The translations under genes were made by a program, and so were the position numbers. A stretch of DNA of 64,000 nucleotides from Isurus oxyrinchus. Taxonomy: Eukaryota. Below the pieces are notes generated by a model, which saw only the letters and a list, made by a program, of their open reading frames with translations, was not told the origin of the DNA and ran no database searches. The stretch is from assembly GCA_026770705.1 (NCBI GenBank), contig JANJGN010000385.1:310001-374000 (forward strand), given 5' to 3'. Below, piece after piece: positions 4,940 through 64,000 of the stretch (positions within the stretch are counted from its first letter, which is position 1; every line of letters begins with the position of its first letter).

Positions 4940-5079
4940 TCAAACAGTCTGTCGACTTCCTTTCACTGTTTGTTCCTCCCAGACACAGACTCCAGCGATA
5001 GTGATAACCACAGCCACAAGGAATATCACAGCTCGTATTCCCAGGATCAGGATCACGTGCAGAATCTCTCCTCCACTGT
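4940..5079 (-). CDS. Gene A terminal exon: transmembrane segment with intramembrane Arg and short tail (activating type)
   Basis: Acceptor ttctctag|, phase 1. Reads SGGEILHVILILGIRAVIFLVAVVITIAGVCVWEEQTVKGSRQTV* with no Tyr. Not in the ORF track. Confidence 0.8.
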
Positions 5080-6761
5080 CTAGAGAACACACAGAAAGAA
5101 ATCATCACTGACTCTCCGCTTTCAATCTCTCACTCTGGCTGAACAATCAAGCTTCATATCACTGCAACATTTGCTGTAATATTGAACCATCCACTGGGAT
5201 TCAATGTGGAATGAATGTTTTCATTGTAAACACTCTAAGAGTGGACAATCGGAACTTTCCCCTTAGCGTGGAACATTGGTGAGAATGGATCATTGTGCTG
5301 TTGGACTCCCTGTCCAATGTTTCTCTCCATCGCTGTGTACAGGATTGTGCTGTAGAAAATTCTGGAAACGTTTTGTGAAGGATGGAAATCCATCTCGGAC
5401 GCGTGTGCGAATCGGGCAGGATCGAGATGGACTCCCCCATGGACTTACACCCCCCGCTTAATAAACAGTTCCAATCTTTACCCAGAGAGAGGGGAGAATG
5501 TGGAACTCGCTCCCACTGGGAGGGGTTGAGGTGAACAGTATCGATGTATTTACGGGGCAGGAGGGTCAGTAACCAGAGGGACACAGATTGACGAACTGGA
5601 GGGGGAGATGAGGAGAATTTGTTTTGACAGAGCAAGTTGTTGTGATCTGGAAGGTGCTGCCTGAAAGGGCGGTGGAAGCAGATTCAATAGGAACTTTCAA
5701 AAGGGGAATTGGATAAACACTTGAAGGAGGAAGATGGGGTAAAGTGGAGTGATGGTTAGTGGATCTGATGGGATAGAACATTGAAAGACCTGGCACAGGC
5801 ACAATGGGCTGAATGGCCTCCTCCTGTGCTGTATCATTCTCCGCTTCCATGATCTCTCCCCCAGTCAGTAACCACTCCAGATCCCTCTTGAAGGCAACAG
5901 AGAAACAGCAACCACCACACCCACAGACAGCACATTCTCGAGGATCACTGCTCTCTGGGAAAAGATGAACTCCCCAACATCCAGCCTATTCCTGCTTCCC
6001 GGAGAGTGTAAACCCTTCAGGGAGGCGCTGAGGAAGTTTTCAATAAAATGACATCAAATCTATCGTTTGAGAAATAATTGAATTCCGATGAACTCACAGC
6101 TTGTGAGGCAAACTGGGAAGTGGATTTGCTTGAAAAGCTGAGAGATGCAAGGGTTAAGTTCTACTGTGCACCACTGGTGGTACAGTGTAACTACAGCGTG
6201 ACGTTTACATAGGCAATCCCTATTATAAACAAGGACATTGGACATCAGGTGAAATAAGGGCAGTGGAAAAGTGAGAACATGATGTAAGCTTTTCACCAAC
6301 AGGAATTCCCTTCCTAAACCTCTCCACCTCTCTCTTACTCTCAGATACTCAAACAAAATTTCACACAGATTCACGTAAGGAGGAGTTGGGACAATTGACT
6401 GGTCAAAGGGTTAGGTTTCAGGAAGCTTCTTAAAGTAGGATAGAGAGTTGGAGAGACAGAGAGTATCTGTGAGTGTCTCTATGCATCTGAGTGTCTGTAA
6501 TAGACTTTGCAATTTCCATATTCTTCCATAAACATGAAAGGGAACAGAAATCTCAGAATCCAGGTCAACTCTCCGGTGCAGCACTGAGGGAGGTCAGGTA
6601 ACCCGCTGGGGAGTATTGTGCTAGTGTGTTTGTTTGTGTCTTTGTGTGTGCTCATATACGAGGGATTGTGTATCTGCAGGTGTCTATTTAGGTCTGTATA
6701 TTTGTGTGTGTTTGTGTCATGTTTCAATCTGAGACAGATGATGAAATCTGTGTGCACTCAC

Positions 6762-6914
6762 ATTCCACAGTGATGGTTATGAATCCCTCCACTGCTCCAT
6801 GTTCATTCTCTGCCAAACACTGATAGTCTCCAGTGTCCCTGGATTTAACGTGAGGAATCACCAACCACAGCTCATTGTTGGAACTTGTTCTGTTCATTGT
6901 GATATTCAGATGTC
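6762..6914 (-). pseudogene. Gene A C2b exon remnant (3' half only, acceptor lost)
   Basis: Homologous to the 3' half of the intact exon at 61850-62131 (NRTSSNNELWLVIP...DTGDYQC..ENEHGAVEGFITITVE), donor retained. The 5' half is replaced by ~190 bp of unrelated sequence. Confidence 0.8.
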
Positions 6915-7225: not shown

Positions 7226-7522
7226 CTTGTACAGTTAGTACGAGAGTCCGCTCCGATGAAACAGATGGATATCTCACTCTGCAGCTGAGAGTGTGTCCGT
7301 GGTGTTTGAGTGATGGGATCAGGGTCAGAACAGAAGTATGGGTCAGAGTGACACCATGCTGAGTTACAGTGTTTGAGACTGATCCACGTACGTCAGTGGG
7401 AGTGTCCCAGGTTAAGACAGGTGCTGCTGTTCCATTGCACGTTGTGTTGAAGGTGCAGCTTACATCCACACGCTTTCCTGCAATAATTTCAGCAGGGAAT
7501 ATCATGGGTTTATCTGTGAAAT
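7226..7522 (-). CDS. Gene A C2-set exon (C2a, Siglec domain 2)
   Basis: 297 nt, phase 1-1, ag/gt ends. FTDKPMIFPAEIIAGKRVDVSCTFNTTCNGTAAPVLTW...HGHTLSCRVRYP, with the extra Cys of Siglec domain 2. Confidence 0.9.
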
Positions 7523-8250: not shown

Positions 8251-8619
8251 CAGAAACGTGAAGCCGGGTTACAGGGTAATAGTTATGGCTCGGACCATTG
8301 TCAAATTCTATTCTGAAAAAATAAGGTCCCGCATCTTCTCATCTGATGTTGTCTATGATCAAGGAACAGTCGCCATCTTTCAGGTCTCCAGACAGCCGGG
8401 TCCGATGGCAGAACCGTGGTAACTCGTGACTGTGATCCTTGGAGTGAAAGTCAATGGGAGCCCAGGGAATCTGTTTCTCATTATTAAACCAGACTCCACC
8501 TCGCGGTTGGTTTTCCAGACACGATGGATAACTGAAATGACATGGAATCTGTACACACGAACCTTCCTGTGCTGTCACCTCTCGTGGAGTGTCACCTTTC
8601 CACTCTTGTGACAGTCCAA
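8251..8619 (-). pseudogene. Gene A second V-set exon (V2) with in-frame stop
   Basis: 369 nt with splice sites intact. TGA at 8339-8341 (NIR*EDAGPYFFR), where the paralog at 41715 has TGG. Confidence 0.85.
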
Positions 8620-11794: not shown

Positions 11795-12172
11795 CAGAAA
11801 CGTGAAGCTGGGTTACAGGGTAATAGTTATGGCTCGGACCATTGTCAAATTCTATTCTGAAAAAATAAGGTCCTGCATCTTCCCGTCTGATGTTGTTTAT
11901 AATCAGGGAACAGTCGCCATCTTTCAGGTCTCCAGACAGCCGGGTCCGATGGTCGAACCGTGGTAACTCGCGACTGTGATCCTTGGAGTGAAAGGCTATA
12001 GACCATTTAAACCATTTGTTCTGTCTGTCCCTCCTCATATACCAGATTCCGACATGTGTTTTCTTTACCAAATGTGATGGGTAACTGTGATGACATGGAA
12101 TCTGTACACACGAACCTTCCTGCGCTGTCATCTCTCGTGGAGAGTCACCTTTCCACTCTTGTGACAGTACAA
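11795..12172 (-). CDS. Gene A first V-set exon (V1), Siglec-type
   Basis: 378 nt, open, phase 1-1. CVQIPC...VGIWY...GDLKDGDCSLIINNIRREDAGPYFFRIE, essential Arg present. Confidence 0.9.
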
Positions 12173-19183: not shown

Positions 19184-19223
19184 CTTGGAGAAGTGACAGG
19201 AGGAAGTAAGATTTCCCGATCAT
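19184..19223 (-). CDS. Gene A leader exon
   Basis: MIGKSYFLLSLLQ + G|gtaat, intact. Confidence 0.85.
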
Positions 19224-22679: not shown

Positions 22680-22885
22680 AAAACAGAAAATGCTGGAGAA
22701 ACTGAGTTGGTCTGGCAGCATCTGTGCAGAGATAAACAGAATTAACATTTTGTGTCCTTATGACCCTTCTTCAGAGTCTATAAGCAAGAAGTCTGTTTCT
22801 CTCTCCACAGCTGCTACCAGACCTGCTGAGTTAATGCAGCATTTTCTGTTTTTATTTCAGATTTACAGCATCTGCAGTATTTATT
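22680..22885. mobile_element. Fold-back element made of two opposed Penelope-like terminal fragments
   Basis: AAAACAGAAAATGCTG...CAGCATTTTCTGTTTT inverted arms, similar to the termini at 26455-26588 and 43783-43860. Confidence 0.55.
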
Positions 22886-22892
22886 TTTAATG

Positions 22893-24180
22893 ACAGGAGG
22901 ACATTCAGCCTCTTGATCCTGTTACACAGGAACAGCAGGAGGCCATTCAGCCCCCTCGAGCCTGTTACACAGGAACAGGAGGAGGCACATTCAGCCCCTC
23001 GAGCCTGTTACACAGGAACAGGAGGAGGCCCATTCAGCCCCCTCGAGCCTGTTACACAGGAACAGGAAGAGGCCCATTCAGCCTCTTGATCCTGTTACAC
23101 AGGAACAGCAGGAGGCCATTCAGCCCCCTCGTACCTGTTACACAGGAACAGGAGGAGGCCCATTCATTCCCTCGAGCCTGTTACACAGGTACAGGAGGAG
23201 GCCCATTCAGCCCCCTCGAGCTTGTTACACAGGAACAGGAGGAGGCCCATTCATTCCCTCAAGCCTGTTACACAGGAACAGGAGGAGGACCATTCAGCCA
23301 CTCAAGCCTGTTACATGAGGACAGGAGAAAGCCCATCAGCCTCTTAAGCCTATTATACAGGAACAGGAAAAGGACATTCAGTCCCTCAACACCCTTCCAC
23401 AGGAACAGGAGAGAGTCTCAGCTCCTCGAGCCTGTTACCCAGGAACAGGAAGAGGACATTCAGTCTCTCAACCCACTTCCACAGGAATAGGAAATCCATT
23501 CAGTCCCTCGTGCCTGTTACACAGGAAAAGGAGGAGGCCCATTCTGTTCCCTCGAGCCTGTTACACAGGAACAGGAGGAGGCCCATTCTGTCCCCTTGAG
23601 CCTGTTACACAGGTACAGGAGACCCATTCAGCCTCCACAAGCTTGTTACACAGGAACATTAGGGGCTCCATTTAGCCCCATCAAGCCTGTTACACAGGAA
23701 CAGGAGGAGGCCCATTCAGCCACTCAAGCCTGTTAGATAGGAACAGGTGGAGGCCCATTCAGCCCCATGATGCTGTTACACAGGAACAGGAGGAGGCCCA
23801 TTCTGTCCCCTTGAACCTGTTACACAGGAACAGGAGGCGGCCCATTCAGACCATCTAACCTGTAACACAGGAAAACAAGGAGATCCATTCAGCCTCTTGA
23901 GCCTGTTACACAGGAACAGGAGGAGGCCGATTCGGACACTCGAGCCTGTTACACAAGGACAGGGGGAGGGCATTCAGCACCTGGAGCCTGTTACACAGGA
24001 ACAGGAGGAGGCACATTCAGCCCTGCCAAAGACTGTTACACAGGAACAGGGGGAGGCTTAATCAGCCACACAATCATGTCACACTGGAACAGGAGGAAGC
24101 ACATTTAGACCCCTCGAGCCTGTTACACAGGAACAGGAGGAGGCCCATTCAAACCCTCGAGCTTGTTGCATATGAACAGT
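22893..24180 (+). repeat. ~42-bp minisatellite (CCTCGAGCCTGTTACACAGGAACAGGAGGAGGCCCATTCAGCC)n, about 30 units
   Basis: Tandem units directly visible, no unique spacers. The unit resembles the reverse of a CR1-type 3' tail (compare 40850-40880). Confidence 0.9.
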
Positions 24181-24272
24181 CGATGGCCCTTCAACCACAT
24201 TATTGGCACGCAAAGGGTTAACAGTTTTCTAACAGTGCGAGGCAAAGAGTTGCTTTCTCACTTGGTACCAAG

Positions 24273-24413
24273 CACTTCCTCATTTTGACTCACAGTGACA
24301 CATGCACCCTTTTTAATTAAACACAAATAGGGAGCAGCACAGGAAGAGGTCATTCAGCCCAAGCAGAGCGTGTGGGCAGTTCCTCCCCAGGCGAGCAGTC
24401 GGACAGGTGCTGG
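24273..24413 (+). promoter_or_regulatory. Gene B non-coding 5' exon and ETS-like block
   Basis: CACTTCCTCATTTTG...TGG|gtaagt. Confidence 0.55.
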
Positions 24414-26454
24414 GTAAGTAACGGAACGATTGGAATTCACTTCCACCACCAACACTGTCCTTTGTTGATGTTGTGACTTTATAAAGACAGATTCCAATGA
24501 TTGATGCCTTTGAAAGATTTTTACTGATTATTGAATTCTGGGTGTGAGACTCAAGTCTGTTGTACAGAACATCTTTCTAGCTCAAGGGATGAGGGAACTG
24601 CAGAGACATGAGCTTTGGGATGTCCTGAGATAGTGAAAGGTGCTATAGAAATGCAAATCAATCATTGTTTGTCTTACTTAAAGACTTGTAACTCTCTGCA
24701 GAGCACCTATCATCCCACAGAGAATCAAATTAGTCTATGAAGACATTGTCTAAAAGCAGTTCTGATCTCTCGAGAGCTGTCGGACAAGAGGTGAGGTCTC
24801 ATTAACTCCTTTCTCTTTCACAGTTTGAGAGTGAGAAGTGGATGGAATATCTGGGAGTGGACGATGATCGGGAAATCTTACTTCCTCCTGTAACTTCTCC
24901 AAGGTAATATCATCGTCAGCTTGGACAGATTTATGTTTAGCAGTCTTTGTAAAAGATCATTCTTATCTCTTTATCTCTGTAACCTCCTGCAACTCACCCA
25001 AACAACTTCCCAGATCTCTGTGTTACTCCAATTCCGGCCTCTTGACCATCCCCCGATTCCCATCACTCCAATACTGGCGGCCGGGCCTTCAGCTGCCTGG
25101 GGCCTGAGCTCTGGAATTCACTCCCTAAACCTCGGGATGGAGGAGATCAGAGGGTTTCATTTTACTGAGAATCACCACGACCACATCACAGCTGCAGTGA
25201 GAATAGACAGAGAGTCCAGCCCTCACACTTCCTGCACAGTTTCACCATAGCAACCACAATATGGAAATTTAAAAATACTGAAAGTTAAACTGAAGCTCAA
25301 ACCAGTCAGTGTAGAGAGATGAGATGTTTACACAGTTTCCCTGTGTATCTTGTAGACTCTGTGTTGGGTGGAAGACTGGCTTCACTAAACAGGGTCCTGA
25401 GGACCATGAGCCAATGTAGAATGAACTTGTCCACTCCTGTGTCCAGGATTCTCTTCCCTCCATTGTGAAACCTTGGGGAGTTCCTTGTGTGTCCTGTAGA
25501 TGGTCCACACTGCAGCCACTGTGCCCCAGTGATGGAGGGGGTGGATATCGAGTCTAGTGGATCTACAAACCTTCCAGAGTTAAATATTGACATTTCTCTC
25601 CATAGTTGGACTGTCACAAGATTGAAAAGGCGACACTTCACGAGAGGTGACAGCGCAGGATGGTTCGTGTGTACAGATTCCATGTCATTACAGTTACTTA
25701 TCAAATTTCATAGGGAGATCACGTGTCGGAATCTGCTTGAAAGGAATAGATGGGAACCCACAGCCGAAATGGTCTATAGCCTTTCATTCCGAGGGTCACA
25801 GTCACAGGGATCAAAGATTCCACCATCGGACCAGGCTGTCTGGAGACCTGAAAGATGGCGACTGTTCCCTGATTATAAACAACATCAGACGGGAAGATGC
25901 AGGACCTTATTTTTTCAGAATAGAATTTGACAATGGTCCGAGACATAACTATTATCCTGTAACCCAGCTTCACGTTTCTGGTAAGTGCTGTGTTATAATT
26001 ACTCAACAATTCACATTCAACACTCAATGGGAGATAACACAAACTGTGACGTTTACATATTAACACAAAACGCAGCTTATTATAACTTGCTATCTGATTC
26101 TCAATAACCTGGTGATAGCTTCCAGTTCAGTCCTAAAGCAACCTCTAATACTCACTTTAATATCAATGATTAAAAGCATTAACTGAATTATCAGGTTATC
26201 CACTCCCATCAATCTCTCCTGTCCTGTTTAAAAGTCTGATGTATCGATAAAAGAAAGATGTGCATTTCTGTAGCGCAATTTACCACCTCAGGAGGATCCA
26301 AATCCCTTCACAGCCAATGAAATTATTCCTGAATTGTAGTCACAGATGTAAAACACAGCAGGCAGTTTGTGCACAGCAAGATCCAACAAACCACAAGGTG
26401 ATAAATCACCCAGATCACTGAGGAAATGAGAAGCCAGTGAACTCAAACCTCTGG

Positions 26455-26588
26455 TCTGATGAAGAGTCATACGGACTCGAAACGTTAACCCTGTCTTCCT
26501 CTCCACTGATACTGTCAGACCTGCTGAGTCTTTCCAGCAATTTTTGTTTTTGTTTCAGATTTCCAGCATCCGCAGTATTCTGCTTTTA
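26455..26588 (+). mobile_element. Short Penelope-like terminal fragment with hammerhead-type core
   Basis: CTGATGA-AGAGTC atacg GACTC-GAAACGTT, flanked by an imperfect duplication ACTC.AA.CTCTGGTCTG (26441, 26590). Absent from the paralogous intron near 7760. Confidence 0.6.
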
Positions 26589-29283
26589 ACTCCAATCTCT
26601 GGTCTGAGCCTCTTCTCTCATCCAGTGTTCTCAATTCACATGTCTCGGAGTGAACGTGTATTAAGCTGAGAGACAGAAACACTACTGCCAAAGAGCAAGA
26701 AAATCTCTCCTGATCATTGTAACCTCTCAGTTCTGATATCATCCTTGTAAAAGTGCTTTCTCTTGTGGGACTGTGATTTCTATTTGAACTGATGCTTCAC
26801 GTTATATTTCTCTAAAAGGACCCATTCTCTGTCTGTTAGATTTCACAGATAAACCCACGATATTCCCTGCTGAAATTATTGCAGGAAAGCATGTGGATGT
26901 AAGCTGCACCATCAACACAACGTGCAATGGAACAGCAGCGCCTGTCTTAACCTGGGACACTCCCACTGATGTACCTGGATCAGTCTCAAACACTGTAACT
27001 CAGCATGGTGTCACTCTGACCTATACTTCTGTTCTGACCCTGACCCCATCACTCAAACACCACGGACACACTCTCAGCTGCAGAGTGAGATATCCATCTG
27101 TTTCATCGGAGCGGACCCTCGTACTAACTGTGCAAGGTAAGTACATACACCTTTCATTCTACATCAGCACTCCCTCAGCGCTGACCCTCTGACAGTGCAG
27201 CCCGTTCTCAGTGTCCACATTCTCAGACCTCTCAAAGTGCTTCACAGTCGATTGAAGTTAATTGATCTTTATTTGATTATTACTGAATAAAGAGACAAGC
27301 TGTCTAAAGTTTACATCTCGCACACACCATTCTCCATGGCAACACCTCCACCTATCAGAGACCACTTGCCAACCAATCAGCACTCTCTTCCCATTAAGTA
27401 TAAATTGTGGTTCACTTTCTGTTGGTAATCCTGCGAACGGGCTTCTTGATTCCTGCCCTGACATCTTAATGTCCAAATGAACAGAACAAGTTCCAACAAT
27501 GAGCTGTGGTTGGTGATTCCTCCCATTACATATCGGGACACTGGAGACTATCAGTGTGTGGCAGAGAATGAACATGGAGCAGTGGAGGGGTTCATAACCA
27601 TCACTGTGGAACGTGAGTGTACACAGACATCAACATCTCTCTCAGATTCAAACATTGCACAAACACACACAAATATACAGAACTAAATAGACACGTGCAG
27701 ACACACATGTATGAGCAATTACAAAGACACACTCACGAACAAACACACTAGCACACACTGCCCTGTGGCTTACCTGAGTACTGCACTGGAGAGTTGGCCT
27801 GAATTCTGGGATTTGTGTTCCCAATCATGTTTATGGAAGAATATGGAAATTACAAAGTCTATTACAGACACTCAGATGCATAGAGACACTCACAGATACT
27901 CTCTGCCTCTCCAACTCTCTCTCTCCCTTTAAGAAGCTTCCTGAAAGCTAACCCTTCGAACAATCACCGGCCCCAACTCCTCCTTATCTGATTCTGTGTG
28001 ATTTTGTTTGTGTATCTGAGAGTAAGAGAGAAGTGGAGAGGTTTAGTTAGAGAATTCCTGCTGGTGAAAATCTTACATCATTTACTCACCTTTCCAGTGC
28101 ACATATTTCCCAGTATGTCCAATGCCCCTGTTTATAATGATGACTGCCTATGTAAACGTCACGCTGTAGTTACAGTCTCCCACCAGTGGTGGCATTGTAG
28201 CACTTAATCCTTGTGTTTCCCAGCTTTTCAAGCAACTCCACTTCCCAGTTTGCTACACAAGCTGTGAGTTCATCAGAATTAAATTATTTCTCAAATGATA
28301 GATTTGATAATTCATTTTATTGAAAACTTCCTCAGTGCCTCCCTGAAGGGTTTACACTCTCTGGGAAGCAGGAATAGGCTGGATGTTGGGGAGTTCATCT
28401 TTTCCCAGAGAGTAGGGATCCTTGAGAATGTGCTGTCAGTGGGTGTGGTAGTTCCTGTTTCTCTGTCGCCTTCAAGAGGGATCTGGAGTCATTACTGACT
28501 GTGGGAGAGATCATGGAAGCGGAGAATGATACAGCACAGGAGGAGGCCATTCAGCCCACTGTGCCTGTGCCAGGTCTTTCAATGTTCTATCCAATCAGAT
28601 CCACTAACCACCACTCCACTTTACCCCATCTTCCTCCTTCAAGTGTTTATCCAATTTCCCTTTTGAAAGTTCCTATTGAATCTGCTTCCACCGCCCTTTC
28701 AGGCAGCACCTTCCAGATCACAACAACTCGCTCTGTCAAAACAAATTCTCCTCATCTCCCCCTCCAGTTGGTCAATCTGTGTCCCTCTGGTTACCGACCC
28801 TCCTGCCCCTTAAATACATCGATACTGTTCACCTCAACCACTCCCTGTGGGAGTGAGTTCCACATTCTCCCCTCTCTCTGGGTAAAGATTGGAACTGTTT
28901 ATTAAGAGGGGGGTGTAAGTCCGTGGGGGAGTCCATCTCGATTCTGCTCGATTCGCACACGCGTCCGAGATGGATTTCCACCCTGCACTAAACGTTTCCA
29001 GAATTTTCTACAGCACAATCCTGTACACAGCGATGGAGAGTAACATTGGACAGGGAGTCCAACAGCACAATGATCCATTCTCACCAATGTTCCACGCTAA
29101 GGGGAAAGTTCCGATTGTCCACTCTTAGAGTGTTTACAATGAAAACATTCATTCCACATTGAATCCCAGTGGATGGGTCAATATTACAGCAAATGTTGCA
29201 GTGATATGAAGCTTGATTGTTCAGCCAGAGTGAGAGATTGAAAGCGGAGAGTCAGTGATGATTTCTTTCTGTGTGTTCTCTAG

Positions 29284-29423
29284 ACAGTGGAGGAGAGATT
29301 CTGCATGTGATCCTGATCCTGGGAATACGAGCTGTGATATTCCTTGTGGCTGTGGTTATCACTATCACTGGAGTCTGTGTCTGGGAGAGACAAACAGTGA
29401 AAGGAAGTCGACAGACTGTTTGA
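29284..29423 (+). CDS. Gene B TM/terminal exon with intramembrane Arg (open, but in a pseudogene)
   Basis: ttctctag|AC AGT GGA... = SGGEILHVILILGIRAVIFLVAVVITITGVCVWERQTVKGSRQTV*. Confidence 0.75.
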
Positions 29424-30859
29424 AGCTTTGTAAAGCAACAATCTGGTCAGTCAGTGCGGACAAATAACGTGTGATGTTGTGTTAAGTTGTAATCAAACTG
29501 GTCAGTGTCCTGGTTAGAATCACCTTCGTATCAGAGAGGCATTCCAGCACAGTAGGAGACCATTCAGCCCATTAAGTCTATGCTGTCTCTGTGTAGAGCA
29601 ATCCACTCAGTCCCATTCCCCCGCTCTATCCCCGTATCCCTGCAAGTTTATTTCCAAGTGTCCATCCAATTTCCTTTTGAAATCGTTCATCGTCTCCACT
29701 TCCACCATCCTCGTAGGTAGCGAGTTCCAGCTCATTACCACTCGCTGTGTAAAAAAGTTCCTCCTCACATCCCCCCACTGCCCACAACCTTCAATCTGTG
29801 TCCCCCAGTCCTTGTCCCATCAGCTAATGGCAACAGCTTCTCTTTGTCTACCGTATCTAAACCCATCATCATCTTGTACACCTCGATCAGATCCCCCCTC
29901 AATCTCCTTTGCTCCAAGGAGAACAACCCCAGCTTCTCCAACCCAACCTTGTAGCTAAAATCCCTCATCCCTGGACCCATTCTGCTCAATCTCCTCCCCA
30001 CCCTCTCAAGGACCCTCACTTCCTTCCCAAAGTGAGGAGACCAGAACTGGACACAATACTCTAGCTGTGACCTAACCAGAGCTTTATAAATGTTCAGCAT
30101 AACCTCCCTGTGTTTGTACTCAATCCCTCCATTTATGAAAAGCTTATTCTTTCCATCAGCACAAACAACAATTTCCAAGCGGACTCCCATCAGCAGACAG
30201 AGTGCAATGAAACATCGGCATGCCTGCTTCTTAATGTACGGAGAGAAACCTGGAATGAGAGATTCTCCTTCTTCTCCTCAGCAAGCTGAAACTTTTCCTT
30301 ATACCTGGTGCTCCCCAGTCCTGCTGTGTGGACACATCATAACCACGGCATTGTCTGGCTGTGTGCAGCCAACATGGTCAAATAGGAATGAACAGAAATG
30401 TGACATTGCTAAACTCTGTTCTCTGATTGGAATGTGCTTTCTGAATGCTGCACCTTTTTCATGCTGCGATAGATTGTAAGAAGCATTTGGGTTATGAATA
30501 AAATTACATTGATTAACACAAGTGATTAAAATGCTCAGCCTGTTCTGTAGATACTTATGGATTAAAATTCTTATTTTGCTGCAAGATTCTTGGCTCAAAG
30601 ACATTACTCCATGTTGTCACTTTTTCCAGTCAGATGAATTCCTGTGCCCATCTTTATAATGGAAATTTTCAATGTAAACACGTCACATTGCAGCTGCACA
30701 CTCCTGCCAGTGGTGGTGCCATTCCAAAACTGTCTTGCTGCACCAACACAGTGAGAATTATTCTCGACATGTACATGATGTTGTTGTTACACAGACATCA
30801 GGCGGAATCTTGGGCTGTGCCTAGAATGCACTTAGGACATTGCAGACCACGCACAGAAC

Positions 30860-31845
30860 TGACAGTGCAGCGTTTCCTCAATCCTGACCCTTGGTCAGTG
30901 CAGCGCTCCCTCATTACTGTCCCTCTGACAGTGCTGCACTACCTCATTATTGACCCTTTTCAAGTGCAGCACCCTGTCAGCACTGACCATCTGACAGTGC
31001 AGCACACCCTCATGGCTGACAATCTGACAGTGCAGCAATCCCTCAGTACTGATCCTCTGACACTGTATCCCTCCCTCACTACTGACCTTCCGACAGTTCA
31101 GCACTCCCACGGTACACACCTTCTGACAGTGCAGCACTCCCTCAGTACAGACTCTCTGACAGTGCAGCACTCCCTCAGTACTCACCCTCCCACAGCGCAG
31201 CCCTCTCTCAGTACTCACCCTCCCACAGTGCAGCACTCCCTCAGTACTCACCCTCCCACGGTGCTGTTCGAGTTGATTCAATCAAGACTGGTGCCCAAAG
31301 AGGGAGGTTTCAATGCTAAATCATTGAATCGGTGAAAATTATTTTTAGGCTTACGGGAACAAGACTTAGTTCCTCAAATCCTTTCTTTTGCAATAACACA
31401 CAGTACAAGAATTCTGTTTAAATAAATTCCAGTTAAACTTTGCCATGAAAGGATATCTTCTCACACTCGGCTCTACCTCAGTACTAACCCTCCCACAGTC
31501 CGGCACCCCCTCAATACTGACCCTCTGACTGTGCGGAACTCACTCAATACAGACCCGCCGACAGTTCAGCACTCCCACATTACTGACCCTCTGACAGTGC
31601 AGCACTCCCTCAGTACTGAACCTCTGACCGTGCAGCACTCCCTCATTACTGACCCTCTGACAGTGCAGCACTCCCACATTACTGACCCTCTGACAGTGCA
31701 GCACTCCCTCATTACTGACCTTCTGACAGTGCAGCACTCTCCCATTACTGACCCTCTGATAGTGCAGCACTCCCACATTACTGACCCTCCCACAGTGCAG
31801 CACTCCCACAGTAGAGTCCCGCTGACAGTGCAGCACTCCCTCCGT
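30860..31845 (-). repeat. 33-bp minisatellite, mirror of 2615-3592
   Basis: Reverse-complement units with the same internal unique spacer. Confidence 0.9.
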
Positions 31846-32067
31846 AATGATAACAGGGGTCGTTGAAATGTATCATACGGCCCGAGACCTGTATTGGGGA
31901 CTCTATCGCCTGAGTTTCAGCCTCTGTGGTGAGGGGGAGGAGTCTAATCCCACGGAGCCAATGGAGAAGCTTCATGACTACAGCTGCCCAAATATGAGCT
32001 GACAGATCACACATGGTAAACGTTTTGCTGAGAGCACAAAACATCCTCGATCTTCTCACTGATTACC

Positions 32068-37998: not shown

Positions 37999-38376
37999 TT
38001 GGACTGTCACAAGAGTGGAAAGGTGAAACTCCACGACAGGTGACAGCGCAGGAAGGTTCGTGTGTCCAGATTCCATGTAACTACAGTTATCCAGCACGTG
38101 TAGTACGGAGAGCACGTGTCGGAATCTGGTACGTGAAATGGTACACATGGAATACAAGGTCTAGAGGGACTATAGCTTTTCACTCCAAGGATCACAATCG
38201 CGAGTTAACACGGTTCCGCAATAGGACACGGCTGTCTGGAGACCTGAAAGATGGCGACTGTTCCCTGATTATAAACAACATCAGACGGGAAGATGCACAT
38301 TATTATTATTTCAGAATAGAATTTGACAGCAGCAATAGTTACAGCTACTATCCTGCAACCCAGCTTCACCTTTCTG
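37999..38376 (+). CDS. Gene C V-set exon V1 (sialic-acid-binding Arg present)
   Basis: 378 nt, ccccag|...|gtaagt, open. CVQIPC...DCSL...YYYFRIE. Confidence 0.9.
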
Positions 38377-41300
38377 GTAAGTGCTGTGTTATAATTACTC
38401 AACAATTCACATTCAACACTCAATGGGAAATAATAGTGTTTGATTTGCTTGTTTTTTGGCCGTGTTAACCAGCATCACTATTTTTAATGATTTGTCTATT
38501 TCTGCTCCCAGATCCATGAGCTTATTGTGTGTGATTGAATCCACATCATAGCTGTAACGTAAACCGAGCTGAGGGATGATGACACTTCCCCCCTGAGTGA
38601 AGTGTCTCCTCCCCACTACACCTTCCACCCCTCACACTGTCCGTGTAAACCCCCGTCCCATCTCCAGCCTCTCGTTCCCCTCCAAAGTCCTTGAACGTGT
38701 TTCCATTTCCCGAATCCATTCCCATCTTTCCCGGAACTCCATGTTTGAATCCCTCCAATCAGGTTCCCACCCCAGCCACTGTGCTGAAACAGCTCTTATC
38801 AAGGTCACAAATGGCATCCTGTGTGACTGTGACAAAGGTCAACTTTCCCTCCTCGTCCTTCTCGATCTGTCTGCAGCCTTTGACACGCTCGACCACACCA
38901 TCCTCCTCCAACCCCTCTCCACTGTGGTCCAGCTGGGTGGGACTGCTCTCCCCTGGCTCCATTCTTATCCATCTCATCGTAGCCAGAGAATCACTTGCAA
39001 TGGCTTTGCAGCATCATCTGAACAGTGTTAGTTTTCACCTGTCCACTGAGGATCCCCAGCTCTACCTCACCACCACCTCTCTCGACTCCTCCACTGCTGC
39101 TAAATTATCAGGCTGCTTATCCGACATCCAGTACTGGATGGGCAGAAATTCCCTCCAATTAAATATTGGAAAGACTGAGGCCATTGTCTTCATTCCCCGC
39201 TCCAAACTCTGTTCCCTCGCTACCAACTCCATTCCACTCCCTGGCAGCTCTCTGAGATTGAAGCCAATCTGTTCACAGCTTTGTTGTCCCATTTGATCCT
39301 GAGATGAGCTTCCGGCCTCATATCTGCACCCTCACTAACACCGTCTATTTCCACCTGCGTAACATCGCACGACGTCACCCTGTCTCAGCTCATCTGCTGC
39401 TGAAACCCTCATCCACGCCTTCATTACCTCCAGACTCGACTGTTCCAACACACGCTCTACACTCCATAAACTTGAGGCCATCCAAAACTGCTGACCACAT
39501 CCTTACTCACACCAAGTCCCGTTCCCTTATCACCCACTCTGCTCGATGACCGAGACTGGCTCCTGGTCAAGCAAAGTCGCAATGTCCAAATTTTCATCTT
39601 TGTTTCCGCACTATCCCTGTAATCTCCTCATCCTCCTACAGTACCTACAACACTCCCTATCTCTGTAACCTCTTCAATTGTCTACAACCATCCCATTCTC
39701 TGTTACCTCTTCAAGCTCCTATCACTTCCCTATAGCTGTAAATTCATCCTGCCCAACAAACCTACCAATCTCTGCAACCTCCTCCAGCCACTACAACCCT
39801 CCCTATTTCTGTAACTTCCTCCTGCCCCTAAAAGCTTCCCTATCTCTGTAGCCTGCTCCAGTCCCGACAACTTTCCCTGCCCCTGTAACCTGCCCCAGTC
39901 ACTACAACCTTCCTTCTCTCTGTAACCTCCTCCAGCCCCTCCAACCCTCTGAGGTCTCTGTGCTCATCCAATTCCAGCCTCTTGACCATCCGCCGATCCC
40001 ATCACTCCAACATCAGCGTCCATGCCTTCAGCTGCCTGGGGCCCGAGCTCTGTAATACCCTCCCTCAACCCCTCTCCATCCCTCTCTCTCACTCTCTCTA
40101 TCTCTCTCTCTCTGTCTCTTTGTCTCTTTCTCTCTGTCTCTCCACAACACCGAACTCTTCTGGTCAGCTGTTCCTAATATCTCCACACGTGTCTGGGTGA
40201 CATACTTTGTTTTATGACGCTCCTGTGTAGCACCTTGGGGTGATTTGTCATGTTCAAGTTGTTGTGTAAATATAAGTTGTTGCCCTTTGACCCTTGACCC
40301 CAGCTTGAGTCTTATTTTTGACGGAATGTACATCCTCCTTAGATTTCTGACCAAAATGTCATTTGATTATTTTTATTGAGCGAATGCCAAGCCCCGATAC
40401 CGAGCGAGAGCCTCCTCATTTGCTGAGTTTAAGGTGATGAGTCAGCCCCTTAGTCTGTAGAGGGGATTCTCCTCGGTAATGTGCAGCCTTGTTTGTGTCT
40501 CTCCACAAGCGCATGAGGGGTTTGTACAGAGGCTGCAGCGCTGGAGGGGGTCTGCACAGGGGTCCTGGCCTGTCCTGAGCCGGTTTTAGCAAGGTCCACT
40601 CTGGCCTTGGCAGCTGAAAGCCAGCCATTGGACAGACGGGGCCTGTCACAAGGAGCCTGTTAGTCACTACCCCCCCCGTGTCTCCTGTGCTCGGATCCAG
40701 ACCATGTTGGCTGGTGGATCTGGCTCAGGAAGGGTCCTCCCCATGGGACCCCCTGATGGAAGGTGGGTCGAGCGGGTCAGTCACTTGCATGTTTATTCTG
40801 CAGCTTTAATATTTTAAGAAGGTAAGAATGTAGGAACATAAGAAATAGGGACAGGAGCAGGCCATTCGGCCCCTTGAGCCTGCTCTCACTGATCTGGTTG
40901 TGGCCTTAACTCCATTTTCCTGCCTGACACAAACCCTTGACTCCCTTGTCGATCAAAAACCTGCCTCACTCAGCCTTGAGTCTATTCAATGGCCCAGCCT
41001 CCACTGCTCTCTGGGGAAGAGAATTCCACAGGCTAGCACCCCTCTGAGAGAGGAAATTCCTCCTCATCTCAGTCTTAAATGGGAGAGCCCTCATTCCGAA
41101 ACTGTGCTCCCTGGTTCTAGATTCCCCCACGAGGGGGAAACATCCTCCCAGCATCCACCCTGTCAAGCCCCCTCGGAATCGGATATGTTTCAATAAGGTC
41201 ACCACTCATTCTTCTAAACTCCAATGGATACAGGCCCAACCTGCTCAACATTTCCTCACAGGACAAACCCCTTAATCCCAGGAATCAGCCCAGTGAACCT

Positions 41301-41714: not shown

Positions 41715-42083
41715 ATGAACCCTCACAAGAGTGGAGAGGTGACATTCCACGAGAGGTGACAGCGCAGGAAGGTTCGTGTGTACAGATTCCATGTCATTAC
41801 AGTTATCCATCGTGTCTGGAAAACCAACCGCGAGGTGGAGTCTGGTTTAATAATGAGAAACAGATTCCCTGGGCTCCCATTGCCTTTCACTCCAAGGATC
41901 ACAGTCACGAGTTACCACGGTTCCGCCATCGGACCCGGCTGTCTGGAGACCTGAAAGATGGCGACTGTTCCCTGATTATAAACAACATCAGATGGGAAGA
42001 TGCAGGACCTTATTTTTTCAAGATAGAATTTGACAATGGTCCGAGCCATAACTATTACCCTGTAACCCAGCTTTACGTTTCTG
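41715..42083 (+). CDS. Gene C V-set exon V2 (essential Arg->Lys, extra Cys)
   Basis: 369 nt, open, phase 1-1. Begins (D)EPSQEW, contains YPSCLE and YFFKIE. Confidence 0.85.
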
Positions 42084-43390: not shown

Positions 43391-43457
43391 GACTATCAGT
43401 GTGTGGCAGAGAATGAACATGGAGCAGTGGAGGGGTTCATAACCATCACTGTGGAAT
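43391..43457 (+). pseudogene. Gene C C2b exon remnant (last ~67 nt only)
   Basis: DYQCVAENEHGAVEGFITITVE + donor. The breakpoint differs from genes A/B. Confidence 0.8.
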
Positions 43458-43469
43458 GTGAGTGTGGAG

Positions 43470-44840: not shown

Positions 44841-44984
44841 CACATTTTGTCCGAAGGAGGTGAGAAATGAGGGAGGGAATTCCAGAGGTTAGGATCCAGG
44901 CAGCTGAAGGCACGGCTGCCAATGGTGGAGCGATAGGAATCGGGGGAAGGTCAAGAGGCTGGAATTGGAGGTGCATCGAGATCT

Positions 44985-45510
44985 CGGAGGGTTGTAGAGG
45001 CTGGAGGAGTTTACAGAGATAAGGAAGGTTATAGGGGCTGGAGGAGGTTACAGAGATAGGGAGGGTTGTAGGGGCTGGAGGAGGTTACAGAGATAGGGAG
45101 TGTTGTAGGGGCTGGATGAGGTTACAGAGATAGTGAGGGTTGAAGGGTCTGGAGGAGGTTACAGAGATAGGGAGGGTTGTAGAGGCTGGAGGAGTTTACA
45201 GAGATAGGGAGGGTTGTGGGGGCTGGAGGAGGTTACAGAGTTAGGGAGGGTTGTGGGGGCTGGAGGAGGTTACAGAGGTAGAGAGGGTTGTGGGGGCTGG
45301 AGGAGGTTACATAGATAGGGAGGGGTGTAGGGATGGAAGGTGGTTGCGGAGTTAGCGAGTTTTATATGGGCTGTAGGAGGTTACAGGGATAGGGACGGTT
45401 GTGGGGGTTGGAGGAGGTTACAGAGATAGGGAGGGTTATAGGTGCTGAAGGAGGTAACAGAGATAGGGAGGGTTATAGGGGCTGGAGGAGGTAACAGAGA
45501 TAGGGAGGGG
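44985..45510 (+). repeat. ~37-38-bp minisatellite (GGCTGGAGGAGGTTACAGAGATAGGGAGGGTTGTAGG)n inside an L2-like 3' fragment
   Basis: Tandem units directly visible. Confidence 0.85.
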
Positions 45511-45803
45511 GTAAGGAGGGATTTGAAACGATGTGAATTTTAAAATTGTGGCATTGTCGGACCGGGAGCCAGTGTAGCTCAGTGACCAACAGGGAGTGAT
45601 GTGTGAGTTAGGACATGGGGACAGCAGAGTTTAGGATGAGCTGATGTTTATGGAGAGTGAAAGATGGGAGGTCGGGCAGGAGAGTGTTGGGATAGTTGAG
45701 TGCAGAGGTAACAAAGGCAGGAATGAGTGTTTCAGTGTGAAGATTCTATCTTACGCTCTAACTTTGCTATGACGTTGTCTCATTGTTGTCCTTCCCTCCT
45801 CAG

Positions 45804-46740: not shown

Positions 46741-47236
46741 TGCAAGACTCGATAACCAATGAAGCAGTTTCGAAGTGAGCTCACTGTTGTCATGTAGGAA
46801 ACGCAACAGTTGATTTGTACACAGCAAGATCCCACAAACAACAGCGTGCAATTGAGGTGATAATTGATTATTTTAGTGAGGTTATTTGATACATATATAT
46901 ATAGAAATTACATATATAATGTGGGTCACTAATGACCCTTAAGGGAGGGAAACCTGTCCATTTTAACAGGTCTGGGTGTATATGTGACTCCAGTCTCAGA
47001 CACCATCATGGTTAACTCTTACCTGCCCTCTGAACTGGTCTCCCAGTTTGGGACAAACCAGTGGTTCAGGAGGAAGACCCCCCACCACCATCTCAAGGGG
47101 AAACTAGGGATGGACAATAAATGTCAGCATTGCCCGAGAATGAGTATTTAAACACTGAGTGAGTGTATCGCTTCTCGAGATACATCGGAGCATCATTGTA
47201 AACCTGTAGTGCAGTAATTAATGACTGTTTTTACAG

Positions 47237-47333
47237 GTAGAGACTCCAGTAAATGGACAGTAGGATTGTTCACGGCTGGGATCATGTTGAGTGTTTTCCT
47301 GGCTGGAATCTTCATCTTCATCTGTGTGAGAAA
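47237..47333 (+). CDS. Gene C transmembrane exon (uncharged)
   Basis: ttacag|...AA|gtaagt. RDSSKWTVGLFTAGIMLSVFLAGIFIFICVRK, homologous to 63383-63479. Confidence 0.85.
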
Positions 47334-47499
47334 GTAAGTCTGAAGATTTAACTTGATTTTAATATAAACATTTGTTGAGGACTATTTGGACAGTTTTTAC
47401 AAAGGGCCAGCACGGGCACGATGGGCTGAGTGGCTTCCTCCTGAGCTGTGAGATTTTAAATTCTTTAATCAAATGTGACTGTCACTGGTGAGGCCGTTA

Positions 47500-47920: not shown

Positions 47921-48056
47921 TTGATTCTGTGCTTTGTGCAGATGTGATTTAAAGAGACAGTCCCAGTCATTGGTGTAAGTTACAGTGGGCTCTGTGTCTG
48001 TGCTGCACTGACTCTCTGCTATATGATAACCACAGTGTGATATTGTGTTATTGCAG

Positions 48057-48138
48057 GAGAAAGACAGCGATGGAGGAGAGAGTTTCAGGGACCAGTGACA
48101 TTGTATTGACTCCCAGTCCACTCTCTGTGAAGCACCAG
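48057..48138 (+). CDS. Gene C cytoplasmic exon 1
   Basis: ttgcag|, phase 2-0, links TM and last exon in frame: RKTAMEERVSGTSDIVLTPSPLSVKHQ|gtacag. Confidence 0.7.
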
Positions 48139-48273
48139 GTACAGGAGCTGTTTACACTCACTCCAAAGCTTCAATCTCAGTGTGTAGACAACACATGTCC
48201 CAGATTCCCAGCCCAGTTACCCACTGATTTGTACCTGTGGAGTCAGCAATGGTTCAGTATCATGCTGTCTCTC

Positions 48274-49556: not shown

Positions 49557-49805
49557 GGTAAACAGAACGTGCTGATTACTGAGCCCCGGAACACAACCAG
49601 AGATACAACTAGCGAGGGGGAGACCCCAGCTCCCCGGGGACTTTCTGAATGTGCAGTGGGAGGTGATGCTGGACATGGGAACCCTGAGAATCCCGCGGAC
49701 TTTCTCTACGCCAATCCCCAAGTCTTCAGGGTGCCCAGTGGTGATGGGTCTGTCCACAGGGAAGAGGAGACGGAATACGCACAGATCAGATTCAAGCGAA
49801 ACTGA
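49557..49805 (+). CDS. Gene C terminal cytoplasmic exon with degenerate ITIM (FLYANP) and ITSM (TEYAQI)
   Basis: ctgtag|, phase 0. ...NPADFLYANPQVFRVPSGDGSVHREEETEYAQIRFKRN*, the two-Tyr layout of CD33-related Siglecs. Confidence 0.85.
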   Translation, partial: GKQNVLITEPRNTTRDTTSEGETPAPRGLSECAVGGDAGHGNPENPADFLYANPQVFRVPSGDGSVHREEETEYAQIRFKRN

Positions 49806-62131: not shown

Positions 62132-63382
62132 GTGAGTTACACAGAATTGAACATTCTGTTTTTATTAGCTCATGGGATATGGGCATTGTTGACAAGGCCA
62201 TCTGTAACTGCCCCTTGAGAAGGTGGTGGTGAGCTGCCTTCTTTAACTACTGCAGTCCATGTGGTGTAGGTACACCCACTGTGCTGTTAGGGAGGGAGTT
62301 CCATGATTTTGTCCCAGCGACGGTGAAGGTACGGCCGATATATTTCCAAATCTCATGGAAGACCAACACCACAAGTTCGCCTCCAAGTCACACACCACAC
62401 TGACTTGGAACTGTCTTGGTGGAAGAGGTTAAGGGTTTGGAAGGTGCTGTCGAAGGAGCCTTGGTGAGTTGCTGCAGCACATTTTGTAGATGGTGCACAC
62501 TGCGGCCATTGTGTGCCAGTGGTGGAGGGTATGAATGTTTATGCTGGTGGATGGGCTGTCGATCAAACAAGCTGCTCCTGGATGGTGTCGAGCTTCTTGA
62601 GTGTTGTTGGAGCTGCACTTATTCAGGCAATTGGAGATTATTCCATCACACTCCTGACTTGTGCCTTGTCCGATGGTGGACAGGCTTTGGGGGGTCAGGA
62701 GTTGAATTACTCACCGCAGAGTTCCCAGCCTCTTACCCGCTCTTGTAGCCACATTATTTCCTGTTGCCGGGTTGTTGCCAGGGCCATTAGCCTTTGCTGT
62801 ATCCAGTATCATCAGCTGATTCCTGATGTCACGTGGAGTCAATTGAATTGTCTGAAAGCTGACATCTGTGATGCTGGGACCCTCTGGAGGAGGCCGAGAT
62901 GGAGCATCCACTCAGCACTTCTGGCTGAACATGGTTGCCAATGCTTCAGCCTTGTCGTTTGCACTGATGTGCTGAGCTCCCCCATCGTTAAGGATGGGGA
63001 TATTTGTGGAACATCCTCCTCCTGTTAGATCTTTAATTGTCCATCACCATTCATGACTGGATGTGGCAGGACTGCAGAGCTTAGATCTGACCCGTTGGTT
63101 GTGGGATCGCTTTGCTCTGTCTATAGCATGTTGTTTCCGCTGTTTGGCGTGTATGTATTCCTGTGTGTCACCTCAGCAGCTTGGCACCTCTGTTATATGT
63201 GAATCCTCCTTATAGAAACCTGCATGTACATGGATATTATCAATAAATATTACATAGATAAATGTTATTTGTATAGACCTTTCATGCATAGACAATATCA
63301 CTTCACAAGTTCAGAATTACTACATGTACATAGGGAACCATTCTCAAACTGTACCGGAGTCATTCATTGGCTGATTTTACAG

Positions 63383-63479
63383 GGCGAGATTCCAATGAAT
63401 GGAAAGCAGGATTGCTTGGAGCTGGAATCTGTTTGAGTGTTGGACTGAGTGGATTCTTCATCTTCAAGTGTGTGAGAAA
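63383..63479 (+). CDS. Gene D transmembrane exon (inhibitory-type homolog); tail exons lie beyond the window
   Basis: ttttacag|...AA|gtaagt, 97 nt like gene C. RDSNEWKAGLLGAGICLSVGLSGFFIFKCVRK. Confidence 0.8.
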
Positions 63480-64000
63480 GTAAGTGTGAAGGTTTAATTG
63501 GTTGATTTCAAACATTTTTTCTTCAAACTTCTCTCCTTATAGAAAGAACTTGCATTTCTATAGCACCTTTCACAACCCAAAACCCTTCACAGCCCCTGAA
63601 GAGTTTTGATTTTCACATACTGTTTAACATCTCATCCAACACTCAATGTTTCACAACTCAGTCCTGTAACTGGCAGTGTTGACCCGCACCATAAGATACC
63701 TTGTGACCTCCTGAGGATGTGAAAGGTGCTATATAAATGAAAACTTTTCTTTTGTTAGTGAATGCAATCTCTTTCCTTTTTCCATGTTTCATTCACTCTC
63801 TCTTATCTCCACTAATGCTCTCCTTCTCATTCTCTCTCTCATTCACTCTCTCTCTTATCTCCACTAATGCTCTCCTTCTCATTCTCTCTCTCGTCCTCTT
63901 ACACATTGTTCAGTATCTCACATTTTTAAGGAGCGCTGAGCAACATCTGCTCCTTCAGAAGATCCACCTCAACATCTGGAGTGAGCAGTGAATTGAAACT

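What the first reader, a model, noticed from the sequence alone, without database searches (positions are those of the whole stretch)
29284..29423. Hidden activating TM exon (ILHVILILGIRAVIFLVAVVITITGVCVW) missed by the ORF track
Seen: a 140-nt phase-1 exon behind a clean pyrimidine-rich acceptor, open in both copies (also 4940-5079). It encodes a hydrophobic stretch with one Arg in its N-terminal half, then a stop. It is unrelated to the C/D TM exon. Known: a TM Arg near the outer leaflet couples LILRA, GPVI, OSCAR, FcaRI and NKp46 to FcRgamma/CD3zeta, and Siglec-14 uses a TM Arg for DAP12. Inferred: this exon was recruited to convert an inhibitory gene into an activating one.
Basis: partly seen in the sequence, partly recalled or inferred. 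Interest (0 to 1): 0.8.

Follow-up and report, generated by a model that had tools for sequence, protein, structure and literature searches.

The report
Shark Siglec-like arginine membrane exon
This is a real, spliced last exon that gives shark Siglec-like immune receptors a membrane anchor with a buried arginine and almost no tail, the usual build of an activating receptor, but the two genes that carry it here both contain premature stop codons.

Summary
The exon is real. 29284-29423 (+) and its copy 5079-4940 (on the minus strand) are 136/140 identical. Each lies behind a pyrimidine-rich AG acceptor and encodes SGGEILHVILILGIRAVIFLVAVVITI(T/A)GVCVWE(R/E)QTVKGSRQTV-stop. Contigs of 4 of 4 public runs join the C2 exon to it (27136|29284, GT..AG, phase 1).

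It is not hidden in public data. Automatic models of seven shark species end with it, and the arginine is kept in 16 of 16 proteins. They carry Siglec/CD33-like, CD22/CEACAM-like or SLAM-like ectodomains. No non-shark hit was found.

The activating reading fits: an arginine in the membrane helix, a 12-residue tail without tyrosine, and inhibitory-type neighbours with 95-97% identical C2 exons. No adaptor was tested, and which one it would use cannot be read from the sequence.

New for this window:
- Gene B is broken (TAA in the leader, TGA in the V exon).
- Gene A has a TGA in its second V exon.
- Both carry only the 3' half of a third Ig exon.
- Gene A is a mosaic: gene C-like 5' part, gene B-like 3' part.

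So the exon was inherited by duplication, not recruited here. This scan had already found the same exon on other pieces of this genome.

The parts
29284..29423 (+). Gene B terminal coding exon: membrane helix with Arg (codon 29328-29330), 12-residue tail, TGA at 29421-29423. The 3' UTR runs on to at least 29558.
   Evidence: Sequence and translation. Joint 27136|29284 in 4 of 4 runs, and contigs on 29282-29429 and 29427-29558.
4940..5079 (-). Gene A terminal coding exon, the inverted copy; 136/140 identical to B's.
26840..27136 (+). Gene B C2-set exon, phase 1-1; its donor G|gtaagt splices to the TM exon.
   Evidence: Joints 25980|26840 and 27136|29284. Pfam C2-set_2, E 1.3e-9.
25606..25980 (+). 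Gene B V-set exon, with an in-frame TGA at 25623-25625 (codon 6) where paralogues have TGG.
   Evidence: Joint 24903|25606. Translation. Pfam V-set, E 3.2e-11.
24823..24903 (+). Gene B leader exon: ATG at 24864, TAA at 24891-24893 (codon 10). The other 4 of the 5 leader copies in the window have a Ser codon there.
   Evidence: Joints 24413|~24823 and 24903|25606.
27455..27613 (+). Remnant of a third Ig exon in gene B. Only the 3' half is present; the 5' half is replaced by unrelated sequence.
   Evidence: Alignment with gene D's whole exon, tblastn, Pfam I-set positions 49-90 of 90.
6754..6912 (-). The same Ig3 remnant in gene A.
7226..7522 (-). Gene A C2-set exon, open.
8251..8619 (-). Gene A second V exon, with an in-frame TGA at 8341-8339. 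Splice sites are intact; at 369 nt, skipping it would keep the frame.
11795..12172 (-). Gene A first V exon, open, with YFFRIEF.
   Evidence: Pfam V-set, E 1.8e-13.
19184..19223 (-). Gene A leader coding part (MIGKSYFLLSLLQ), intact.
47218..47334 (+). Gene C membrane exon of the other (inhibitory-type) kind; no basic residue in the helix. Listed for contrast.
63376..63480 (+). Gene D membrane exon of the C/D kind (69% identical to C's).
49557..49802 (+). Open stretch that holds gene C's cytoplasmic tail exon, with TEYAQI (ITSM/ITIM-like) and YANP.

Best explanation
The 140-nt segment is the last coding exon of an activating-type Siglec-like receptor gene of a lamniform shark (Carcharodon or a close relative). 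The window holds two such genes head to head: A on the minus strand and B on the plus strand.

The exon is spliced in phase 1 directly onto the C2 exon. It supplies a type-I membrane helix with an invariant arginine, followed by 18 hydrophobic residues, and a 12-residue tail without tyrosine.

By analogy with all known receptors of this build, the arginine would pair with the aspartates of a dimeric signalling adaptor (FcR-gamma/CD3-zeta type or DAP12 type). That pairing would be needed both for surface expression and for signalling through the adaptor's ITAM. This step is inferred, not shown.

The exon is an old module of galeomorph sharks. It also closes CD22/CEACAM-like and SLAM-like receptor models. 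Genes A and B got it by segmental duplication, not by fresh recruitment.

In this assembly gene B is a pseudogene (two nonsense codons). Gene A can encode a receptor only if its stop-bearing V2 exon is skipped.
For: Splicing:
- GT..AG joints 24903|25606, 25980|26840 and 27136|29284 were found. The last is in 4 of 4 runs.

Conservation:
- 8 of 9 hits of the exon peptide among 1.84e9 proteins are shark receptor models that end with it.
- Region searches add 7 more proteins.
- The Arg is kept in 16 of 16, and LGIRA in 15 of 16.
- The junction ...LTVQ|DSGGE... stands in P0011, P0012 and P0014.

Build:
- The Kyte-Doolittle maximum covers ILILGIRAVIFLVAVVITI, mean 2.95.
- The tail ERQTVKGSRQTV has net charge +2 and no Tyr.

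Paired setting:
- C2 exons of A, B, C and D differ at 8-14 of 297 nt.
- Genes C and D have another TM exon without a basic residue, and C has a TEYAQI tail.

Duplication:
- A 7773->4919 matches B 26589->29444 at 91.5%.
- A 19500->7207 is collinear with C 32382->43212 at 89-97%.

Broken genes.

The rule that the depth of the basic residue chooses the adaptor comes from the Introduction of PMC8102735.
Against: - No adaptor was looked for or tested. A 2014 survey reported no FcR-gamma homologue in the shark data of its time (PMC4016189, passages).
- The joint contigs have short sides (21-30 letters) and were laid at 93% likeness. Those on the exon show 5 other letters in 148. They may therefore come from gene A or from paralogues elsewhere, not from gene B.
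- All four runs are 'RNA?' by guess, and three of them also hold unspliced contigs across the acceptor.
- Between A and B the exon differs at 4/140 (3 of the 4 differences change residues) against 4/300 in the intron upstream. There is thus no sign of constraint on these two copies.
- The shark protein models are automatic predictions. Some may join exons of neighbouring genes.
Confidence: 0.7

Rival explanations
1. Both copies in this window are dead relics. The exon type is functional elsewhere in the genome, but genes A and B make no receptor. The spliced contigs then come from intact paralogues or from transcripts that are degraded.
For: - Gene B has TAA at leader codon 10 and TGA at V-exon codon 6.
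- Gene A has a TGA inside V2 with intact splice sites.
- Both carry a truncated Ig3 exon.
- The exon shows no more conservation than the intron between A and B.
- The contigs on the exon differ from B at 5 of 148 letters.
Against: - Gene A's leader, V1, C2 and TM exons are all open. V2 is 369 nt, so skipping it keeps the frame.
- V-C2-TM proteins of that build are modelled in Carcharodon and Scyliorhinus.
- The stops could be polymorphic null alleles.
- Run X1 holds a 310-letter contig with 1 other letter over B's own intron/exon border, so B's locus itself may be transcribed. The run could also hold DNA.
Confidence: 0.45
2. The arginine does not recruit an ITAM adaptor. It could instead keep the receptor in the ER or make it unstable (a regulated or decoy receptor). 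It could also pair with a non-ITAM partner such as a DAP10-like chain or another receptor.
For: - No adaptor is shown.
- FcR-gamma was reported missing in sharks in 2014.
- The hydrophobic run is long (29 residues), so the depth of the Arg is ambiguous: position 3-5 counted from the invariant inner end, 8-11 counted from the outer acidic residue.
Against: - The Arg is invariant across three ectodomain families and seven species, with a constant 18 hydrophobic residues behind it. That points to a specific partner at a fixed depth.
- Every well-studied receptor of this build uses an Asp-bearing adaptor (PMC8102735 Introduction; PMC13358205 section 8).
Confidence: 0.15
3. The exon is an alternative end of an inhibitory gene: one ectodomain with two membrane ends chosen by splicing.
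For: Activating-type and inhibitory-type genes share nearly identical C2 exons.
Against: - tblastn finds C/D-type TM exons only at 47218-47334 and 63376-63480, and the tail exon only at 49557-49802. None lies near A or B.
- Downstream of each Arg exon come repeats and then the next gene's leader cassette.
Confidence: 0.03
4. The hydrophobic C-terminus is a GPI-anchor signal, not a membrane helix.
For: Small residues (DSGG) lie just before a C-terminal hydrophobic run. One SLAM-like homologue has only 4 residues behind it.
Against: - Here a 12-residue charged tail follows the run.
- An invariant Arg sits inside the run.
Neither is usual for a GPI signal. That rule is recalled; no predictor was run.
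Confidence: 0.02

Closest known systems
Human paired Siglecs: Siglec-5/Siglec-14 and Siglec-11/Siglec-16
   Same: - A Siglec-type V-set plus C2 ectodomain nearly shared between an ITIM-type gene and a neighbour that has a basic residue in the membrane helix and a short tail.
- Clustered genes shaped by duplication and exchange.
- Activating members prone to null alleles.
Source: PMC13358205, passages of sections 4.3.4, 7 and 8.
   Different: - There is no detectable sequence relation of the membrane exon to any non-shark protein: 0 of the 9 hits were non-shark. This is an independent or very old module, not an orthologue. The names 'Siglec-12/13/14' in the shark records are automatic.
- V1 loops of A and C differ strongly, so the ectodomains are not near-identical throughout.
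- The adaptor is unknown.
Macaque activating KIR (KIR3DS), made by recombination of a KIR3D gene with the TM/tail part of KIR2DL4
   Same: - An activating receptor created by joining an existing ectodomain gene to a ready-made Arg-bearing membrane module.
- The depth of the Arg (position 4) decides for FcR-gamma against DAP12.
Source: PMC8102735, abstract and Introduction. Gene A here is likewise a mosaic, with a C-like 5' part and a B-like 3' part.
   Different: - Different families and lineages.
- In the shark the module is shared by at least three ectodomain families.
- Its partner has not been tested.
Leukocyte-receptor-complex receptors with an outer-leaflet TM Arg (Fc-alpha-RI, NKp46, GPVI, OSCAR, LILRA), coupled to FcR-gamma/CD3-zeta
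   Same: One Arg a few residues inside the outer end of the helix, some 16-18 hydrophobic residues behind it, an acidic residue at the inner end, and a short tail. The human sequences are recalled, not taken from a call.
   Different: - No sequence similarity was found.
- A 2014 survey reported sharks to lack C2-only LRC homologues and FcR-gamma.

Membership tests
Siglec family (sialic-acid-binding Ig-like lectins) | N-terminal V-set Ig domain followed by C2-set domain(s) | tested here: met
   - Pfam V-set: E 3.2e-11 for gene B's V exon and 1.8e-13 for gene A's V1.
- Pfam Ig_CD22: 4.5e-7 and 1.8e-10.
- Pfam C2-set_2: 1.3e-9 for the C2 exon.
Siglec family (sialic-acid-binding Ig-like lectins) | Conserved F-strand arginine that binds the sialic-acid carboxylate | tested here: inconclusive
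   YFFRIEF is present in B's V exon and A's V1. That this R is the canonical one rests on recall of the Siglec motif; no structural alignment was made.
Siglec family (sialic-acid-binding Ig-like lectins) | Binding of sialylated glycans | not testable with these tools
   Needs glycan-array or cell-binding assays.
Adaptor-coupled activating members of paired immune receptors | Basic residue inside the membrane helix | tested here: met
   One Arg lies within the 29-residue hydrophobic run, inside both the 19- and the 21-residue hydropathy maxima. It is kept in 16 of 16 homologues.
Adaptor-coupled activating members of paired immune receptors | Short cytoplasmic tail without tyrosine motifs | tested here: met
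   The tail is ERQTVKGSRQTV: 12 residues, 0 Tyr. Homologues have tails of 4-12 residues, 0 Tyr.
Adaptor-coupled activating members of paired immune receptors | Inhibitory counterpart with closely similar ectodomain nearby | tested here: met
   - C2 exons of A/B against C/D differ at 8-14 of 297 nt.
- Gene A's 5' part is collinear with gene C at 89-97%.
- C and D have another TM exon, and C has TEYAQI.
- V1 loops differ, and only one ITIM-like motif was found in C.
Adaptor-coupled activating members of paired immune receptors | Physical association with an Asp-bearing ITAM (or YxxM) adaptor | not testable with these tools
This needs co-expression and co-precipitation.
Adaptor-coupled activating members of paired immune receptors | Intact reading frame at this locus | tested here: not met
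   - Gene B: TAA at 24891-24893 and TGA at 25623-25625.
- Gene A: TGA at 8341-8339 in V2. The gene is open only if V2 is skipped.
Orthologue of mammalian Siglec-14, -15 or -16 | Detectable sequence relation of the TM/tail region | tested here: not met
   phmmer of the exon peptide against 1.84e9 representatives found no non-shark protein among its 9 hits at E<=0.001. Short helices carry little signal, so a distant relation is not excluded.

The most novel reading that the evidence does not exclude
One ancient Arg-bearing 'activating cassette' exon has been passed among at least three unrelated Ig-superfamily receptor families of galeomorph sharks: Siglec/CD33-like, CD22/CEACAM-like and SLAM-like. 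It is still being moved by segmental duplication, as the mosaic gene A shows. Because FcR-gamma was reported absent from sharks, its partner could be CD3-zeta or an adaptor not yet described. That would place modular adaptor-coupled activating receptors before the bony-fish FcR/LRC systems.
Probability: 0.4. Interest if true: 0.6.

Novelty: new member of a known kind. Interest (0 to 1): 0.38.

Why it matters
Paired activating and inhibitory receptors are well described in mammals and teleosts. I found no paper on activating Siglec-type receptors, or on a shared Arg-bearing membrane module, in cartilaginous fish. The five searches covered open-access papers and preprints only; subscription journals are not searched.

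If the module couples to an ITAM adaptor, sharks used the same charge-pair logic as mammals and reused one exon across receptor families. The window adds two things to that picture. It shows how such genes are built and lost: a mosaic gene, a truncated Ig exon, and nonsense codons in both activating-type copies but in none of the examined exons of the two inhibitory-type neighbours. It also gives concrete constructs for testing which adaptor is used.

Tried and rejected
- Selection test between the two copies. The exon differs at 4/140 (3 of the 4 differences change residues) and the 300 nt of intron upstream at 4/300. The differences are too few, so the test is uninformative.
- ESM Atlas search of the exon peptide. 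The best score was 0.84 with recognition 1874, both below the tool's own thresholds. It gave no lead.
- Pfam on the exon peptide and on gene C's TM and tail exons: 0 families.
Whether phase, borders and flanks are shared is open.
- Ig3 remnant as a used exon. The only obvious AG before it would be out of frame, and no joint into it is among the 15 joints shown of 45. It is not excluded.
- Alternative-end and GPI readings: see the rival explanations.
- Canonical proximal ITIM in gene C. A motif scan of 47200-53000 found only TEYAQI as a credible site. An N run (49994-50122) lies just behind the tail exon and was left alone.
- Adaptor genes. Two look-ups in this scan's notes found none. No sequence search was possible without a query from a tool.
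- PMC4536121 held none of my terms.
No such tool is on hand, and the joined product was not built. A hydropathy window on the exon alone stood in for it.
- Supplementary files of papers were not asked for. None seemed to bear on a claim.

Full report
**What is there**

The window (64 kb, GC 45%, one N run at 49994-50122) is a cluster of Siglec-like Ig-superfamily genes with many internal duplications.

At 29284-29423 (+) lies a 140-nt segment behind the acceptor gatttctttctgtgtgttctctag. In phase 1 it reads SGGEILHVILILGIRAVIFLVAVVITITGVCVWERQTVKGSRQTV and ends in TGA.

It is 136/140 identical, with one silent change and two amino-acid changes (T>A, and R>E in the tail). tblastn finds no third copy in the window.

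**Is it an exon?**

I laid Logan contigs of four public runs (three studies; all labelled 'RNA?' by guess) on 24220-29800 at 93% likeness. The contigs show a chain of GT..AG joints:
- about 24413|24823
- 24903|25606
- 25980|26840
- 27136|29284

The last joint is in 4 of 4 runs, one contig each.

Limits of this evidence:
- The sides are 21-30 letters.
- The contigs on the exon (29282-29429) show 5 other letters in 148. The joints therefore cannot be assigned to gene B rather than gene A or paralogues elsewhere.
- Three runs also hold unspliced contigs across the acceptor.
- Depth says nothing about expression level.

The same junction (...LTVQ|DSGGEIL...) stands in public protein models.

**Gene models, exon by exon**

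Gene B (+):
- Leader exon about 24823-24903, with ATG at 24864.
- V exon 25606-25980.
- C2 exon 26840-27136.
- TM exon 29284-29423.

Gene B's leader has TAA at codon 10, where the other four leader copies of the window have a Ser codon. Its V exon has TGA at codon 6, where paralogues have TGG. As assembled, gene B is a pseudogene.

Gene A (-):
- Leader 19223-19184, intact.
- V1 12172-11795, intact.
- V2 8619-8251, with an in-frame TGA at 8341-8339 and intact splice sites.
- C2 7522-7226, intact.
- TM 5079-4940.

V2 is 369 nt, so skipping it would keep the frame and give a V-C2-TM product.

Both genes also carry only the 3' half of a third Ig exon (27455-27613 and 6912-6754). The 5' half is replaced by unrelated sequence in both, whereas gene D has the whole exon.

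**Neighbours**

Genes C and D (+) have open leader, V and C2 exons. Their membrane exon is of a different kind (47218-47334 and 63376-63480) with no basic residue in the helix. Gene C has a tail exon with TEYAQI.

BLASTP of the two kinds of membrane exon gives no alignment. No C/D-type TM or tail exon lies near A or B, so the exon is not an alternative end of an inhibitory gene.

C2 exons of all four genes differ at only 8-14 of 297 nt.

Gene A is a mosaic:
- 19500->7207 is collinear with gene C's 32382->43212 at 89-97%, introns included.
- 7773->4919 matches gene B's 26589->29444 at 91.5%.
- The DNA beyond each Arg exon, up to the next leader cassette, is again an inverted duplicate (4897->29 against 29561->34023, 93-95%).

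So the Ig3-remnant/TM module was spread by segmental duplication after the Ig3 truncation.

**Relatives elsewhere**

phmmer of the 45-residue peptide against 1.84 billion representatives gave 9 hits at E<=0.001. One, P0008, is a low-complexity repeat protein and was dropped. The other 8 are shark proteins that carry the match at their extreme C-terminus. By their source names they are:
- CD33-like and Siglec-12 (Scyliorhinus torazame)
- Siglec-13 and CD22-like (Chiloscyllium punctatum)
- CD22-like (Hemiscyllium ocellatum)
- sialoadhesin-like with a single V domain (Rhincodon typus)
- an Ig protein of S. torazame from an independent annotation
- SLAM family member 9-like (Mustelus asterias)

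Three region-restricted searches added seven more:
- Siglec-12 and CD33-like of Carcharodon carcharias
- Siglec-13 and Siglec-14 of Scyliorhinus canicula
- CEACAM5-like and sialoadhesin-like of C. punctatum
- SLAMF9-like of S. canicula

The arginine is kept in 16 of 16, and LGIRA in 15 of 16 (one has LVIRA). Eighteen hydrophobic residues always follow the Arg before an acidic or basic residue.

That makes seven species. By my own knowledge they belong to three orders of galeomorph sharks. No skate, ray, chimaera or non-shark protein was found; this may reflect the databases or the short query.

The window's exons are closest to the Carcharodon models: 93-96% in the C2 and TM exons against 82-90% for catsharks. 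I therefore infer a lamniform source.

The exon is thus annotated in public automatic models.

**How it most likely works**

Shown:
- A spliced terminal exon.
- A strongly hydrophobic stretch (mean hydropathy 2.95 over 19 residues) with one invariant Arg.
- A short, basic tail without tyrosine.
- Inhibitory-type neighbours with almost the same C2 domain.

Inferred: the Arg pairs with the membrane aspartates of a dimeric adaptor, which is needed for surface expression and for ITAM signalling. This is the general rule for such receptors (PMC8102735 Introduction; PMC13358205 section 8).

Which adaptor it uses cannot be read off:
- Counted from the invariant inner end, the Arg sits 3-5 residues inside a 21-23-residue core. 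That is like KIR2DL4 and macaque KIR3DS, with Arg at position 4 and FcR-gamma as partner.
- Counted from the outer acidic residue, it is position 8-11, nearer the DAP12 pattern.
- A 2014 survey found no FcR-gamma in the shark data of its time (PMC4016189, passages).

My rough odds are FcR-gamma/zeta type 0.5, DAP12 type 0.3, other 0.2.

**What is known in print**

Five full-text searches found no paper on activating Siglec-type receptors or a shared Arg membrane module in cartilaginous fish. Subscription journals are not covered.

This scan had already met the same exon on other pieces of this genome, with like conclusions. I read those word-search notes after my own searches. They are not independent support.

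**Verdict**

- The activating reading is well founded as a build but untested as a mechanism.
- 'Recruitment here' is not supported.
- The two copies of this window sit in one broken and one doubtful gene.

Noticed in passing
window 27613 -> 24329 and 24903 -> 24329: 'Goes back' joints in the contigs. The Ig3 donor (runs X5, X6) and the leader donor (X1, 2 contigs) are joined to an acceptor at about 24329, the start of the 5' UTR exon. This probably reflects read-through or tandem leader cassettes in paralogous arrangements elsewhere.
   Followed up: no
window 41735-42082 (gene C, second V exon): This V exon has YFFKIEF where the other V exons have YFFRIEF, and IRWED where they have IRRED. Gene A's V2 has a TGA at that same W/R position. 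The second V domain may have lost the canonical sugar-binding arginine.
   Followed up: partly
window 2509-3668, 30826-31923, 49061-49492, 61062-61823: Arrays of a 33-nt tandem repeat, open in several frames (e.g. ...PLTVQHSLSTD...). Most lie in the stretch behind a gene's last coding exon.
   Followed up: no
window 22875-24200; 10184-10553 and 44875-45614: A 43-nt tandem array lies between the two head-to-head leaders of genes A and B. A 37-nt array lies in A's V1-V2 intron and downstream of C's C2 exon.
   Followed up: no
window 29765-30190 (-) and 38597-39296 (+): Open frames that look like reverse-transcriptase ends of LINE elements. One is just downstream of gene B's last exon, the other inside gene C's V1-V2 intron. 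This is by eye only, not searched.
   Followed up: no
window 12152-11796 vs 38019-38375: The first V exons of genes A and C differ far more in their loop regions than the surrounding introns do (about 93% nt over 5.8 kb). That would fit diversifying change in the binding face.
   Followed up: no
window 43391-43465: Gene C keeps only the last 25 codons of the Ig3 exon, an even shorter remnant than in A and B. Gene D has the whole exon (about 61850-62136).
   Followed up: partly
window 49994-50122: An N run lies about 190 nt behind gene C's tail exon.
   Followed up: no
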